A DNA stretch of 63,976 nucleotides, the filler included, from Hyphochytrium catenoides (lineage: Eukaryota > Protista > Hyphochytriomycota), in NCBI GenBank assembly GCA_900088475.1. It is 9 parts of 9 records of this genome, joined end to end, with 100 filler letters (N's around TTAATTAATTAA, not from the genome) between each part and the next. Parts side by side here need not be neighbours in the genome. Positions count along the whole stretch, not along the records: positions 35,796 to 39,161 come from FLMG01000309.1; 8 more parts are not named here. One strand, 5' to 3'. Of this stretch, positions 35,796 to 39,161 are shown one piece after another. Under the pieces are notes generated by a model, which saw nothing but the letters and a program-made list of their open reading frames with translations, did no database searches and was not told where the DNA came from. The translations under genes were made by a program, and so were the position numbers. Within the stretch, counting starts at the first letter, position 1. Every line of letters starts with the position of its first letter.

Positions 35796-36983
35796 GCGTG
35801 GAACGGGGGAACTATGTGCAAGTGCCATAGATGAAATTCTTATCGGAGAACAGACCCGAAGACGTGCTATGCGCACTACCAACAAGAGTTATGATGAAGA
35901 AGAAGGCTTTCCAGCATACGCTCTACATCAACGAACGATAAAGGAACCGCATCATCACCGTCATCACGAGACTAAGAACAAGGCTCATCCAGGGTCATCA
36001 GCATCATCATCAAACATTAAAGTTCGCGACCAATGGCCGGAGTGCCCATTTTGCGGAAGTCGCAGCCATCCTTCGGAGAAATGCTGGGAACTCGAGCAGA
36101 ACGCTCATCACAGACCGTCTTTCTGGAAATCACGCTCTAAAAGGAATCTGTCAACAGCTTTGAAGAAAATTATTGATTTACCTTCATCAAAGAAGAAGAC
36201 TTCTTATAGTGAAGCAGTCAAGGAACTACTGAGAAGAACTGAAGAACAAAACCAGCTCATCACTAAGGAAACATCTCAACAACCAACTAAACTATCTCTT
36301 TCCGAAGAAGCAGCACGGACAGGAGTCAATTAACATCAAGGTCCCAAGGATCCAAATGAAGGACAATTAAGCAATACGCATGCTCTGAATCAAGAAAAGC
36401 TTGACGCTGCTAACAATACTCTCCTTTCTTTCTATCTAGCACTGAAGCAATCAGACAATTTGCAAGTTTCTGGAGATCTCGACGCGTTTATCAGAGACGC
36501 TAAGGAAACCACATCTCGCCAACCTCGCTGTTCGTCGTACATCGAGAAATGTTTACAATGGAAAACCAAGAACCAAGTAATCTCTTTCTAGCGGGTCTAC
36601 AGCATGCGGGGAGGTGTTGAAGGTTCAGCTTCGACCCTTCACAATAGGGAGTTCGAGCTGCGGAAAGGTGTTGGAGTCTGAGGGCACAGCTATGTGGCCT
36701 ACAAGCTGGGAAGCTTAACTACCCAAGTTTCAGCTCCAAACTCCCAGTAGAAGCCGAGATATGAAGCAAACGAAATGCCCCTGTTTATCTATGCGTTATG
36801 GTCAGTACCCCGGAATACCTTCAGGACTGACTGTTCTAGACAGGGATTTCTCTATGACTGAATATCTTAGGGTTTATTAGGAATAGTTGGCATAGTCAGA
36901 ATAGCTCTAGATTATGGGACCCCAGTTGGGCTTATAAGTCGAGCACTCTCATCTAATGACATTGTCCAATCATCCCGACAACA
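35796..36983 (+). mobile_element. Gag-only LTR element (family B), 3' part: gag with CCHC knuckle and a premature stop at 36333, PPT, and ~315-bp 3' LTR (36669-36983)
   Basis: CPFCGSRSHPSEKC is CX2CX4HX4C. There is no pol between gag and the LTR. The LTR starts TGTTGGAGTC and recurs at 51924, 54981 and 59524. Confidence 0.8.
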
Positions 36984-37980
36984 AATCCAAAAGTGATCAG
37001 AAAATGACCGCTTTCAGAGTTACAGTCTTATGCATGTGATGATGGTAGCCTCCAGGCCGGATATAGCCTTCGCGGTACAATCGGTTAGCCAGCATATGAC
37101 TAACTGTAGATAGACTCACTGGGCCGCTGTGAAGCGGATACTGAGATATCTGAAAGGGACTGCAGACCACTTCTTATGTCTAGGAGGAGAAGCAACCCCA
37201 GACATCATCAATCAGAGTCCAAGACTACAACTCTTTGCAGATGCAGACTGGGCGAGTGATCCTATGAACAGGAAATCCATTTCAGGCTACTTTCTTACAC
37301 TGGGGACTGGTGCTTTCAGTTGGAAGGCTAAGAAGCAAGACATAGTGGCTTCTTCAACCACTGAAGCTGAGTGCATCTCACTGTGGACCGGAGTCAAACA
37401 TGCAGAACACATCTCTTATTTCTTACAGGAGCTTCAGTATCCACTGAGTAGACCCATCCTCGCACATCAAGACAACAAGAGCACAATAACAGTCTGCGAG
37501 ATGCCGAGACCCAAATCGAAATATATTGATGTCGAACACTGTGTGGTTAGAGACCAGGTGAATCGCAAAGTCTTGGAATTGCAACACTGTCCAACCAACA
37601 AGATGACTGCCAACATTCTCACGAAAGCGTTACCAGCACCTCAGTTCCGAGAACTTCTTCCGCAACTCGGGATTGTCCCGTCCACATCCGTCGTAAGACA
37701 AAGTCTACTTTCCGGGGAGGACAAGGCGGAGGCCGACGGACACTCAGCAGGAAGTCTGGACCTGCGGGGAGGTGTTGAGAGCAGAAGCTGACAAGAGCTC
37801 TAAAAGGCTCACAGTTCCAGAAACTATCTGACAAGAGGAAGAAGGCACAAAACAAAGTGTTTCAGAGTTATGTTAACTAGATTATTATCATTAGGTAAGT
37901 CATCACACGACGACAACAAGAAGTAGTAACTGGGTCTAGTAGTTTATACGAGACACAGTTACTCTCCAGAACAACTACAC
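36984..37980 (+). mobile_element. Copia retrotransposon 3' fragment (RT C-terminus/RNase H, PPT GCGGGGAGG, LTR starting TGTTGAG at 37773)
   Basis: RPDIAFAV..HWAAVKRILRYLKGT, FADADWA, RKSISGY, SSTTEAE, DNKS, ILTKAL. Confidence 0.9.
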
Positions 37981-38036
37981 TGTTAGGACTGTGAGTTGTA
38001 TCCGGTATATAGTTCCTGGTCACTCCAGTCTAGTAT

Positions 38037-38115
38037 GGATACTTGGTGCAATGTCTTTGCGGTAGACGTTTGGTTGATCATTCATGAGATCCAGGTTCAA
38101 GTCCTGGAATATCCT
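38037..38115 (+). ncRNA. tRNA-like Pol III gene inside T2 LTR (copy 1, slightly decayed)
   Basis: Acceptor GGATACT/AATATCC, A-box-like TGGTGCAATG, T-arm CCAGG-TTCAAGT-CCTGG, TATATA at about -31, TTTT at 38120-38123. Confidence 0.72.
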
Positions 38116-38153
38116 TTACTTTTCCACTGTACTCTAATAGCGATTTCCTTTCA

Positions 38154-38167
38154 TGGAGGATATTCCA
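38154..38167 (+). promoter_or_regulatory. Primer-binding site of T2 (repeated at 38544-38557)
   Basis: TGGAGGATATTCCA is the reverse complement of TGGAATATCCT+CCA, the 3' end of the LTR-encoded tRNA-like RNA. Confidence 0.85.
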
Positions 38168-38425
38168 CGGCTACGGCTTGGCCCAGTTAGTTGGCTTAAG
38201 GACTCACTGTCCTGCCGTACCAATTAGCGGTTAGAGTCCTCATCTACCTAATGACTGTTGGTTAGTCCGCCTATGTCCGGAATCCGAATGGGCCACAGTC
38301 CTGATGGGAAACTCAAGGAGCTCAGTTACTCATTTCGGAGTCTGAGTTGCTCCTTGACTTCAGTGGGAGTGCTAGGACTGTGAGTTGTATCCGGTATATA
38401 GTTCCTGGTCACTCCAGTCTAGTAT

Positions 38426-38505
38426 GGATATTTGGTGCAATGTCTTTGCGGTAGCACGCTTGGCTGATCATTCATGAGATCCAGGTTCAAGTCCTGGAAT
38501 ATCCT
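38426..38505 (+). ncRNA. tRNA-like Pol III gene inside T2 LTR (copy 2)
   Basis: Perfect acceptor stem GGATATT/AATATCC, D-stem GTGC/GCAC with an enlarged loop, perfect T-arm, and an anticodon stem that does not pair. Upstream TATA and downstream T4. Confidence 0.8.
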
Positions 38506-38588
38506 TTACTTTTCCACTGTACTCTAATAGCGATTTCCTTTCATGGAGGATATTCCACGGCTACGGCTTGGCCCAGTTAGTTGGCTTA

Positions 38589-39161
38589 GAGCAACTGCAC
38601 CGGGAGCCTGTAAACGAAACTTTATCTTTAATTTAAAGTTTCCGAGGATTTCAATCCCGCACCGGACCCTTTATTTGACCCTTTAACTGTAAATTAAAGT
38701 TAAAGGTTCCGCTGACTCTTTAACCGAGCCCGATTTAAAGAGTCTAGACCTGACCCTTTATATCAAACTGGTGTGGTAATCTAGAGGAATAACTAGAAAA
38801 AGCAGTTTGATAGACCGACCTTTTCTGATTTTCTGATGAAGATCTGAAGGGAAAACGCGGGAGCTTTTGAAGTTGAAACACTGCTATCTAGCGGCGAGCG
38901 CTCATCATCAAACAAGAAAAATTAGCTCCTGCTTGCGTCTTTTTTCGGGACATACTGCTATGACTGCATGGTGAAAATAGGAGGGGCGATGAGTCCGCAG
39001 GAGGGCAAGCTGCAATAAGAGGGAGCACCTCAATCAGCAGCAACAACCTTTAACAGCCAGGCAGACGACGCCCGCGCTATCTTCCTACTACTATCAATAC
39101 AGCAGGCAAGCCTGAGGGCTCGCCATTTTAGATAGGGGTAATCCAGCCTTGACCGGCAGGA
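38589..39161. mobile_element. Possible PIF/Harbinger-type DNA transposon left end interrupting the T2 array
   Basis: T2 homology stops abruptly at TTA|GAGCAACTGCACC. A TTA target and a GAGCAACT-type terminus resemble PIF/Tourist ends. The other end is lost in the gap. Confidence 0.4.

What the first reader, a model, noticed from the sequence alone, without database searches (positions are those of the whole stretch)
37981..38588. A second, unrelated TRIM family (T2) shows the same self-primer logic with a different tRNA-like RNA and a matching different PBS
Seen: 173-bp LTRs with no evident similarity to T1 outside the tRNA boxes hold an 80-nt tRNA-like gene ending CCTGGAATATCCT. Each LTR is followed by TGGAGGATATTCCA, which is TGG plus the complement of that end (14 nt). 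Acceptor stem and PBS therefore co-vary between families (GTACGTT/AGCGTAC-A versus GGATATT/AATATCC-T). Inference: this makes coincidence very unlikely and points to a class of elements with orthogonal primer/PBS pairs.
Basis: partly seen in the sequence, partly recalled or inferred. Interest (0 to 1): 0.92.

Follow-up and report, generated by a model that had tools for sequence, protein, structure and literature searches.

The report
Mini-retrotransposon matching its own tRNA-like RNA
A tiny non-coding LTR retrotransposon of a known kind (Helenus, with a tRNA-like gene in each terminal repeat) has a reverse-transcription start site that exactly matches the end of its own tRNA-like RNA, which the published survey of such elements did not find; so it may supply its own primer, though a matching host tRNA could not be ruled out.

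Summary
Two direct repeats of 173 and 174 bp (TG…CA, 169/174 identical) each hold a 79-80-nt tRNA-like sequence. Copy 2 scores 36.6 bits on Rfam tRNA (threshold 29). TTAC-TTTT follows each one. Right after each repeat stands TGGAGGATATTCCA, the exact complement of the tRNA-like 3' end plus CCA (chance 2e-7 at that site).

The element kind is not new. It matches Helenus/TRIMp3 (Kojima 2024, PMC10886601), small LTR elements with tRNA-derived LTRs, and looks most like the rust-fungus families. Kojima looked for complementarity between the LTR tRNA-like sequence and the primer-binding site and found none. T2 therefore looks like a new variant.

My best reading (0.45) is that the LTR's polymerase III transcript is processed, CCA-tailed and primes reverse transcription in trans. 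The main rival (0.38) is a host tRNA with the same 3' end. I could not test that: the host is unknown, and no other T2 copy or matching tRNA gene turned up in any collection.

Only one, rearranged locus exists (LTR-internal-LTR-45 nt of internal). The co-variation with "T1" lies outside my piece and was not tested.

The parts
37981..38153 (+). LTR1 (173 bp, TGTTAG…TTTCA). Its tRNA-like part is the more decayed of the two.
   Evidence: Direct repeat with 38370-38543, 169/174 identical. Homology with copy 2 starts exactly at the TG.
38037..38115 (+). tRNA-like sequence of LTR1. It has a C·A mismatch in the acceptor stem and a 1-nt deletion in the D stem.
   Evidence: Rfam tRNA 19.3 bits, below the gathering score of 29. 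ARAGORN calls it only with relaxed thresholds.
38116..38123 (+). Trailer TTAC plus TTTT, a likely polymerase III terminator. It is the only run of four or more T in the 389-nt unit.
   Evidence: shuffles give a mean of 2.8 such runs, and P(one or none) is 0.19, so this is weak. The same 9-mer TTACTTTTC occurs in three Helenus entries; in the two passages shown (Helenus-3_PSt, Helenus-7_PHord) it follows the tRNA-like part by 0-2 nt.
38124..38153 (+). U5-like tail of LTR1, ending in CA.
   Evidence: Read from the sequence. Identical in LTR2.
38154..38172 (+). Primer-binding site. TGGAGGATATTCCA gives 14 exact pairs with the tRNA-like 3' end plus CCA; extended by 5 nt the match is 17 of 19.
   Evidence: Duplex energy -27.6 kcal/mol against -5.5 for the acceptor stem. 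Inverted repeats I3-I6.
38154..38369 (+). Internal region (216 bp), non-coding.
   Evidence: No frame in T2 is open for more than 67 codons. The 64-aa ORF has no homologues. No Rfam family matches the region.
38313..38357 (+). Stable hairpin just upstream of the PPT-like run. Its role is unknown; a packaging or dimerisation signal is a guess.
   Evidence: -22.3 kcal/mol, z -2.74, 2 of 200 shuffles fold as well.
38362..38369 (+). Short polypurine-like tract AGTGGGAG abutting LTR2.
   Evidence: Read from the sequence. Resembles the short G-rich PPTs of fungal Helenus entries such as …gggagga and …aagggggtg.
38370..38543 (+). LTR2 (174 bp, TGCTAG…TTTCA). It carries the better-preserved tRNA-like sequence.
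38426..38505 (+). tRNA-like sequence of LTR2. It has a perfect 7-bp acceptor stem GGATATT/AATATCC, a D stem GTGC/GCAC with an oversized loop, an 8-nt anticodon loop, an intact T arm and discriminator T.
   Evidence: Rfam tRNA 36.6 bits (gathering score 29), E 7.5e-7, model positions 1-71.
38506..38513 (+). Trailer TTAC plus TTTT of LTR2.
38544..38588 (+). Second copy of the PBS plus the next 31 nt of internal region, identical to 38154-38198. Homology then stops abruptly.
   Evidence: What follows (38589-39161) has no similarity to T2.

Best explanation
T2 is a Helenus-type (TRIMp3) non-autonomous LTR retrotransposon of an unidentified eukaryote, probably a fungus, lying among Ty1/copia debris in a rearranged LTR-internal-LTR-partial-internal arrangement.

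Proposed mechanism (inferred, not shown):
1. The A and B boxes of the LTR's tRNA-like sequence recruit RNA polymerase III.
2. Short transcripts end at the TTTT five bases downstream.
3. Only the acceptor stem and T arm are well kept, and that minihelix is what RNase P, RNase Z and the CCA-adding enzyme need. The RNA is therefore trimmed after the discriminator U and given CCA.
4. The resulting 3' end …UGGAAUAUCCU-CCA pairs with the 14-nt PBS of full-length T2 RNA.
5. It primes minus-strand DNA synthesis by the reverse transcriptase of an autonomous partner, probably a copia-type element.

On this reading the element encodes its own primer instead of borrowing a host tRNA.

Shown: the anatomy, the tRNA-likeness and the exact complementarity that includes TGG against CCA. 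Inferred: transcription, processing, CCA addition, packaging and priming.
For: - Anatomy: TG…CA repeats, a PBS abutting the CA, a G-rich tract before LTR2 and no coding capacity.
- tRNA-likeness: 36.6 bits on Rfam tRNA for copy 2. The B box occurs only in the two LTRs. The acceptor stem and T arm are the only consistently folded parts.
- The complementary 11-mer ends exactly at the discriminator base, and the three PBS bases before it are TGG, matching a CCA that the genome does not encode (the genome has TTA there). P is 2.4e-7 for the 11-mer at that site. This fits a processed, CCA-tailed RNA and not a fold-back of the genomic RNA.
- TTTT lies 5 nt after the tRNA-like end and nowhere else in the unit.
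- The T arm (identical 17-mer in Helenus-3_PHor) and the TTACTTTTC trailer are shared with rust-fungus Helenus families whose acceptor stems differ (TGGAGCC, TCTAGTC…). The acceptor therefore looks lineage-specific within these elements.
- By eye, the tRNA-like body resembles the tRNA-Gln printed in PMC5159642 in the D arm, variable region, T loop and discriminator. Acceptor pairs 3, 5, 6 and 7 differ on both strands. This is a lead only.
- Copia-type elements that use a complete tRNA use tRNA-Met (PMC6317226). T2's PBS is not of that type.
- Weak extra RNA-level pairing exists between the T arm and 38558-38575 (-11.9 kcal/mol; P 0.05 against shuffles, 0.017 against genomic windows).
Against: - There is no precedent. 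Kojima surveyed several hundred Helenus families for exactly this and found no case.
- Only one locus is available, and its upstream LTR has a decayed tRNA-like copy (19.3 bits).
- No expression, processing or priming data exist.
- Beyond 14 nt, the PBS differs from the LTR copy at tRNA positions 60 and 62. It remains compatible with a tRNA-shaped primer that has a CGTGG T stem (A58 and C61 are kept). The real primer could therefore be a slightly different RNA: a host tRNA or a sibling T2 copy.
- The host tRNA set could not be examined.
- The A box fits the consensus only partly.
- The absence of other T runs is not significant (P 0.19).
Confidence: 0.45

Rival explanations
1. The primer is a host tRNA. 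The host has an ordinary tRNA ending …UGGAAUAUCCU-CCA. T2's partner element and T2 use it as their normal primer. The LTR's tRNA-like sequence descends from the same tRNA, through a gene copy or a SINE inserted in an ancestral LTR as Kojima proposes, and still keeps its 3' end. On this reading the match is shared ancestry, and the LTR copy serves only as a polymerase III promoter.
For: - All tRNA-type PBSs known so far use host tRNAs.
- The PBS read to 19 nt gives AGCCGTGGAATATCCTCCA. That keeps the invariant A58 and C61 of a real T arm but differs from the LTR copy at positions 60 and 62, as expected if the primer is a related but different molecule.
- In Kojima's set the tRNA-like sequences of wasps and molluscs are aligned with tRNA-Lys, and several of those families also have tRNA-Lys PBSs. 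Primer type and LTR tRNA type can therefore coincide.
Against: - Kojima found no family in which the LTR copy and the PBS are actually complementary, so such coincidences are rare.
- A scan of 241 million metagenome contigs for either form of the 3' 20 nt gave 16 hits, none of them a tRNA gene. The scans of the prokaryote genomes (T2's own form) and the viral contigs (T2's form and the PBS) found no tRNA gene either. The host itself seems absent from these collections, so this is weak.
- An acceptor stem with five A-U pairs, on a body that by eye looks like tRNA-Gln, is not what known tRNA-Gln genes have (a lead only).
- A non-Met complete-tRNA primer is unusual for copia-type partners.
Confidence: 0.38
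2. Priming is in cis, of the Tf1/Sushi/TAR type. The 11 nt TGGAATATCCT in the R/U5 part of the genomic RNA fold back onto the PBS, RNase H cuts, and the released 5' piece primes. The tRNA-like shape plays no part in priming.
For: - The genome-encoded complementarity is 11 nt, with a 41-nt loop. It dominates the predicted fold of a read-through RNA (-20.2 kcal/mol without CCA).
- Self-priming from the 5' LTR transcript is an established mechanism, also predicted for one copia lineage.
Against: - The complementary block ends exactly at the discriminator of the tRNA-like fold, and the PBS continues with TGG, which pairs with CCA and not with the encoded TTA. Neither is expected for fold-back priming; jointly they would be a coincidence of roughly 1 in 10,000.
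- Fold-back priming needs the transcript to start at 38105, inside the tRNA-like sequence, about 68 nt downstream of where a tRNA-type promoter starts.
- The fold is not significantly more stable than shuffles (z -1.47).
Confidence: 0.05
3. There is no current function. T2 here is a dead, rearranged or mis-assembled relic, and the LTR/PBS match is a fossil of an old event, for example a single aberrant priming that rewrote the PBS. It has no ongoing role and there is no family behind it.
For: - Only one locus was found, with no other copy in any collection searched.
- The LTRs are 2.9% diverged, and the tRNA-like copy in LTR1 is decayed.
- There is no clean right end.
- A 124-nt run identical between the copies could let an assembler join two loci.
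Against: - The collections searched evidently lack this host, so the absence of copies says little.
- The 14-nt match, terminator, acceptor stem and T arm are all intact in LTR2.
- A one-off rewriting of the PBS by the LTR's own RNA would itself mean that this RNA can prime.
Confidence: 0.12

Closest known systems
Helenus (TRIMp3), TRIMs with a tRNA-derived sequence in the LTRs; Kojima 2024, PMC10886601
   Same: - Short non-coding LTR element: 562 bp for LTR-internal-LTR, against a published range of 311-1263 bp.
- The LTR starts TGTT and ends CA. It holds a sense-oriented tRNA-like sequence with a B box, followed within a few bases by a T run.
- The PBS abuts the LTR and a short G-rich PPT precedes the next LTR.
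- The T arm CCAGGTTCAAGTCCTGG is identical to that of Helenus-3_PHor, and the trailer TTACTTTTC matches Helenus-3_PSt and Helenus-7_PHord.
- Tandem arrays are reported for one Helenus family (LTR-11_DR).
   Different: - Kojima states that no complementarity exists between the LTR tRNA-like sequence and the PBS in any family, and concludes that it plays no part in priming. T2 has 14 exact pairs, counting CCA.
- T2's PBS and acceptor sequences are absent from his sequence file.
- Most fungal families prime from tRNA anticodon loops. T2 has a 3'-end (TGG) type PBS.
Cassandra (TRIM with 5S rRNA in the LTRs) and Ajax
   Same: A small-RNA gene with a polymerase III promoter and terminator embedded in the LTRs of a TRIM.
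   Different: They carry 5S rRNA, not a tRNA, and no 5S match was found here. In Ajax the PBS matches tRNA-Leu, a molecule other than the embedded 5S sequence.
Self-priming LTR elements (Tf1/Sushi, Tcn1, the TAR copia lineage)
   Same: The primer sequence is encoded in the element's own LTR and is complementary to its PBS. About 11 nt are encoded.
   Different: There the 5' end of the genomic RNA folds back and is cut off by RNase H. No tRNA shape and no CCA are involved. In T2 the match sits at the 3' end of a tRNA-like fold and includes TGG against CCA, which points to a separate, processed small RNA acting in trans.
tRNA-derived SINEs (SINE2)
   Same: A decayed tRNA head kept mainly as a polymerase III promoter. 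Kojima proposes that such a SINE inserted in an LTR gave rise to Helenus.
   Different: SINEs have no LTRs, PBS or PPT, and LINEs move them. In T2 the repeat starts 56 nt upstream of the tRNA-like 5' end, and T2 has LTR hallmarks.
tRNA-like small RNAs made by RNase P, RNase Z and CCA addition (such as mascRNA); from general knowledge
   Same: An acceptor/T-arm minihelix suffices for processing and CCA addition. Rfam gives a weak T-arm match to mascRNA-menRNA (about 12 bits).
   Different: They have no link to reverse transcription. The match here is far below threshold and covers little beyond the T arm.

Membership tests
Helenus / TRIMp3 (Kojima 2024) | Short non-autonomous element with no protein-coding capacity (published range 311-1263 bp) | tested here: met
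   LTR-internal-LTR is 563 bp (37981-38543). The longest open frame is 67 codons. The 64-aa ORF has no homologues.
Helenus / TRIMp3 (Kojima 2024) | Two direct LTRs with TG…CA ends | tested here: met
   173 and 174 bp, 169/174 identical, TGTTAG/TGCTAG…TTTCA.
Helenus / TRIMp3 (Kojima 2024) | tRNA-derived sequence with box A and box B inside the LTR | tested here: met
   Rfam tRNA 36.6 bits for copy 2. The B box GGTTCAAGTCC is exact. The A box fits only partly (TGGTGCAATGT, by eye).
Helenus / TRIMp3 (Kojima 2024) | PBS just downstream of the 5' LTR and PPT just upstream of the 3' LTR | tested here: met
   A TGG-type PBS abuts the CA. The PPT is short (AGTGGGAG) but resembles the fungal Helenus PPTs seen.
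Helenus / TRIMp3 (Kojima 2024) | Target-site duplication of 4-5 bp flanking the element | not testable with these tools
   The right end is missing. LTR2 is followed by a second PBS and 31 nt of internal sequence, then unrelated DNA.
Helenus / TRIMp3 (Kojima 2024) | Dispersed multi-copy family in the host genome | tested here: inconclusive
   No other copy in the metagenome, viral or prokaryote-genome contigs, or among predicted proteins. The host genome itself is not in these collections.
Tf1/Sushi-type self-priming elements | The first ~11 nt of the transcript pair with the PBS, and the primer is released by RNase H; no tRNA 3' end is involved | tested here: inconclusive
   11 encoded nt do pair with the PBS. 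However, the match ends at a tRNA-like discriminator and continues as TGG against CCA. The transcription start is unknown.
Cassandra / Ajax | 5S rRNA-derived sequence in the LTR | tested here: not met
   No 5S match in the Rfam scans.
Functional (decoding) tRNA gene | Complete cloverleaf with a 7-nt anticodon loop, found by standard tRNA finders | tested here: not met
   ARAGORN at default settings finds none. With relaxed settings the D and anticodon arms are called inconsistently. The Rfam alignment shows an 8-nt anticodon loop, an oversized D loop and a mismatched anticodon stem.
tRNA-derived SINE | The unit starts at the tRNA head and has no LTR, PBS or PPT | tested here: not met
   The repeat starts 56 nt upstream of the tRNA-like 5' end, at a TG, and PBS and PPT are present.

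The most novel reading that the evidence does not exclude
T2 is an LTR retrotransposon that encodes its own primer. A tRNA-like gene in the LTR is transcribed by polymerase III, trimmed and CCA-tailed, and its remodelled acceptor end matches the element's PBS. This would give a primer/PBS pair independent of the host tRNA pool, possibly derived from a tRNA-Gln/PBS-Gln pair by three-way co-variation of the 5' acceptor strand, the 3' acceptor strand and the PBS.
Probability: 0.45. Interest if true: 0.85.

Novelty: new variant of a known kind. Interest (0 to 1): 0.62.

Why it matters
All LTR retroelements known so far start reverse transcription in one of three ways: from a host tRNA, from a host half-tRNA, or from a fold-back of their own RNA.

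A retrotransposon that carries the gene for its own tRNA-shaped primer would be a fourth way. It would explain why Helenus-type elements keep a paired acceptor stem and T arm rather than only promoter boxes. It would also revise the published conclusion that these tRNA-like sequences have no part in priming.

Such an element would make primer choice and primer/PBS co-evolution directly testable, and would offer orthogonal primer/PBS pairs for engineered retroelements.

If a host tRNA turns out to match instead, T2 is simply a new Helenus family with an unusual, though explicable, coincidence.

Tried and rejected
1. Looking for other T2 copies or a matching tRNA gene:
- The metagenome scan with a pattern covering both the LTR form and the PBS-inferred form of the 3' 20 nt gave 16 hits. 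All are chance matches in unrelated, mostly coding-looking DNA, and none is a tRNA.
- The viral-contig scan with the LTR 20-mer gave none. With the 17-nt PBS it gave 12 chance hits in phage sequence.
- A looser scan (T arm, gap, terminator) gave none.
- The prokaryote-genome scan gave two chance hits in Bacteroidales.

2. Using the LTR's 64-aa spurious ORF to find copies among predicted proteins. The word-index search found nothing, exact look-up found nothing, and the full HMMER scan found one unrelated repetitive protein.

3. Identifying the host through the neighbouring copia pol fragment. The only close relative is a 991-bp ENA metagenome contig (95% aa, 96% nt). The next ones are also metagenomic. 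Named hits are only 30-40% identical and come from plants, rusts and animals. Exact look-ups of the window's own ORFs failed. No relatives turned up in viral contigs.

4. A second tRNA-like piece in the internal region. TTGGCCCAGTTAGTTGGCTTAAGG looks like a D arm by eye, but Rfam gives no tRNA match, so I dropped it.

5. An origin by read-through copying of the primer tRNA. I rejected this because it would leave the tRNA antisense and downstream of the LTR, whereas the tRNA-like sequence here is sense-oriented and inside the LTR.

6. A plain tandem duplication or satellite. TRF reports no such array. The homology starts exactly at a TG and follows LTR logic, so this reading is kept only as part of the 'relic or assembly' rival.

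7. A literature search for the PBS or primer strings found only unrelated oligonucleotides. No paper after Kojima 2024 reports self-complementary Helenus elements.

Full report
**What is there.** The piece (35796-39161) is eukaryotic repeat debris. At 37981-38588 lies a 389/390-nt unit present 1.56 times.
- LTR1: 37981-38153, 173 bp, TGTTAG…TTTCA.
- Internal region: 38154-38369, 216 bp.
- LTR2: 38370-38543, 174 bp, TGCTAG…TTTCA.
- The first 45 nt of the internal region again: 38544-38588, identical to 38154-38198.
- Unrelated sequence after that.

The LTRs are 169/174 identical, and all five differences lie in LTR positions 3-95. Homology between the copies begins exactly at the TG. A short purine run (AGTGGGAG) abuts LTR2. 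No frame in T2 is open for more than 67 codons.

**The tRNA-like sequence.** Each LTR holds a sense-oriented 79/80-nt tRNA-like sequence (38037-38115 and 38426-38505).
- The acceptor stem is GGATA(C/T)T / AATATCC, the T arm is CCAGG-TTCAAGT-CCTGG, and the discriminator is T.
- ARAGORN at default settings finds nothing.
- The first Rfam scan of the whole 3.4-kb piece missed it even at E ≤ 10.
- Given only 101 nt, Rfam tRNA matches copy 2 over the full model at 36.6 bits (gathering score 29, E 7.5e-7). Copy 1 reaches 19.3 bits.
- The alignment shows an oversized D loop, an 8-nt anticodon loop and a mismatched anticodon stem. With relaxed ARAGORN settings, only the acceptor stem and T arm are called consistently.
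- It is therefore a decayed tRNA with the acceptor/T-arm minihelix intact, not a decoding tRNA.
- The B box GGTTCAAGTCC occurs in the window only at these two places.
- Five bases after the tRNA-like end stands TTTT, the only run of four or more T in the unit. This is suggestive but not significant (P 0.19).

**The complementarity.** Directly after the CA of each LTR stands TGGAGGATATTCCA. Its reverse complement, TGGAATATCCT-CCA, is the last 11 nt of the tRNA-like sequence plus the CCA that cells add to tRNAs. The genome has TTA at that place.
- An 11-mer match at that exact site has a chance of 2.4e-7, and anywhere in the LTR 3.9e-5.
- The duplex with the CCA-tailed end is -27.6 kcal/mol, against -5.5 for the acceptor stem.
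- Extended to 19 nt the match is 17/19. The two mismatches fall at tRNA positions 60 and 62, while the invariant A58 and C61 are kept. The PBS thus reads like the end of a tRNA-shaped molecule that is very close to, but not identical with, this LTR's copy.
- Further RNA-level pairing of the T arm with 38558-38575 is marginal (P 0.05 and 0.017).

**Surroundings and host.** Upstream lie Ty1/copia fragments:
- a Zn-knuckle gag-like ORF at 35869-36333;
- a pol C-terminus at 37129-37791;
- two copies of a PPT-plus-LTR start, GCGGGGAGG|TGTTGA, at 36605 and 37763.

The pol piece is 96% identical at nucleotide level to a 991-bp ENA metagenome contig, and its 3' LTR is cut off at 37859. The other relatives are metagenomic or only 30-40% identical. 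The host therefore remains unidentified. Nothing suggests a human origin.

**What is known.** Kojima (2024, PMC10886601) described Helenus, TRIMs whose LTRs carry a tRNA-derived sequence, and grouped them with Cassandra and Ajax as TRIMp3. They occur in rust fungi (113 families), a few Agaricomycetes, several animal phyla and Selaginella.

T2 fits this description feature by feature and looks most like the fungal families:
- The LTR starts TGTT.
- The tRNA-like part is followed by a T run.
- The PPT is short and G-rich.
- The T arm is the same 17-mer as in Helenus-3_PHor.
- The same TTACTTTTC follows the tRNA-like part in Helenus-3_PSt and Helenus-7_PHord.

T2's acceptor and PBS strings are absent from Kojima's sequence file. 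[quoted passage not shown] So the kind of element is known, and the LTR/PBS match is the new part. I found no later paper reporting it.

**How it most likely works.** The match ends exactly at the discriminator base and continues as TGG against an unencoded CCA. That points to a primer that is a processed, CCA-tailed small RNA. It argues against Tf1-type fold-back priming, for which neither feature is expected. I give fold-back priming 0.05.

The primer is then either T2's own tRNA-like RNA or a host tRNA with the same 3' end.

For the self-encoded primer (0.45):
- The parts that are kept are exactly those needed for RNase P, RNase Z and CCA processing.
- A terminator stands 5 nt downstream.
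- The T arm and trailer are shared with Helenus families that have quite different acceptor stems, so the acceptor looks lineage-specific.
- By eye, the body resembles the tRNA-Gln printed in PMC5159642, with acceptor pairs 3, 5, 6 and 7 changed on both strands. This is a lead only.
- Copia-type elements that use complete tRNAs use tRNA-Met, which this PBS is not.

For the host tRNA (0.38):
- Every known tRNA-type PBS uses a host tRNA.
- The two mismatches at positions 60 and 62 fit a related but different molecule.
- Nothing about the host's tRNAs could be examined.

A relic or assembly artefact without current function keeps 0.12. There is only one locus, the LTR1 copy is decayed, and a 124-nt run identical between the copies could have let an assembler join two loci.

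**What could not be done.**
- No other T2 copy and no tRNA gene with this 3' end was found in the metagenome, viral or prokaryote-genome contigs, or through the ORF trick. The host itself appears to be missing from these collections, so these negatives are weak.
I did not use it.

**Verdict.** T2 is a new Helenus-type family with a feature the defining survey did not find. I rate it a new variant of a known kind, interest 0.62. It would rise to about 0.85 if the host lacks a matching tRNA or if acceptor and PBS co-vary across subfamilies.

Noticed in passing
window 38426-38505 (and 38037-38115): The Rfam tRNA match (36.6 bits, above the gathering score) was not reported when the whole 3.4-kb piece was searched at E ≤ 10. 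It appeared only when 101 nt were given. This is a filter effect that could hide tRNA-like LTRs in routine scans.
   Followed up: yes
window 38313-38357: A stable hairpin (-22.3 kcal/mol, z -2.7) lies in the T2 internal region, just upstream of the PPT-like run. Its role is unknown.
   Followed up: partly
window 37981-38198 vs 38370-38588: All five differences between the two copies lie in LTR positions 3-95. The last 79 nt of the LTR plus the first 45 nt of the internal region are identical, a 124-nt run. This could mean constraint on the T arm, acceptor, U5 and PBS, a recombinant, or an assembly join.
   Followed up: partly
window 38173-38200: Just after the PBS, TTGGCCCAGTTAGTTGGCTTAAGG looks by eye like a tRNA D arm or A box. 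Rfam gives no tRNA match there.
   Followed up: yes
window 35869-36333, 36605-36620, 37129-37859: Nested Ty1/copia debris: a gag-like Zn-knuckle ORF, a pol C-terminus 96% identical at nucleotide level to ENA contig L001, and two copies of the PPT-plus-LTR start GCGGGGAGG|TGTTGA. The 3' LTR is cut after 88 nt at 37859. The PPT and LTR start resemble those of T2 (GGGAG|TG(T/C)TAG), so this copia family is a candidate partner.
   Followed up: partly
window 38589-38760: AT-rich inverted repeats (38616-38640 / 38685-38709) and repeated ACC(G/T)GACCCTTTAT motifs lie right where T2 homology stops. They could belong to another small element or to a variant internal region.
   Followed up: no
window 38426-38505 and 38544-38562: By eye, the tRNA-like body resembles tRNA-Gln (sequence printed in PMC5159642) in the D arm, variable region, T loop and discriminator. 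From memory, the PBS start TGG-A-GG is also that of a tRNA-Gln PBS. This raises the possibility of a tRNA-Gln origin followed by joint change of both acceptor strands and the PBS.
   Followed up: partly
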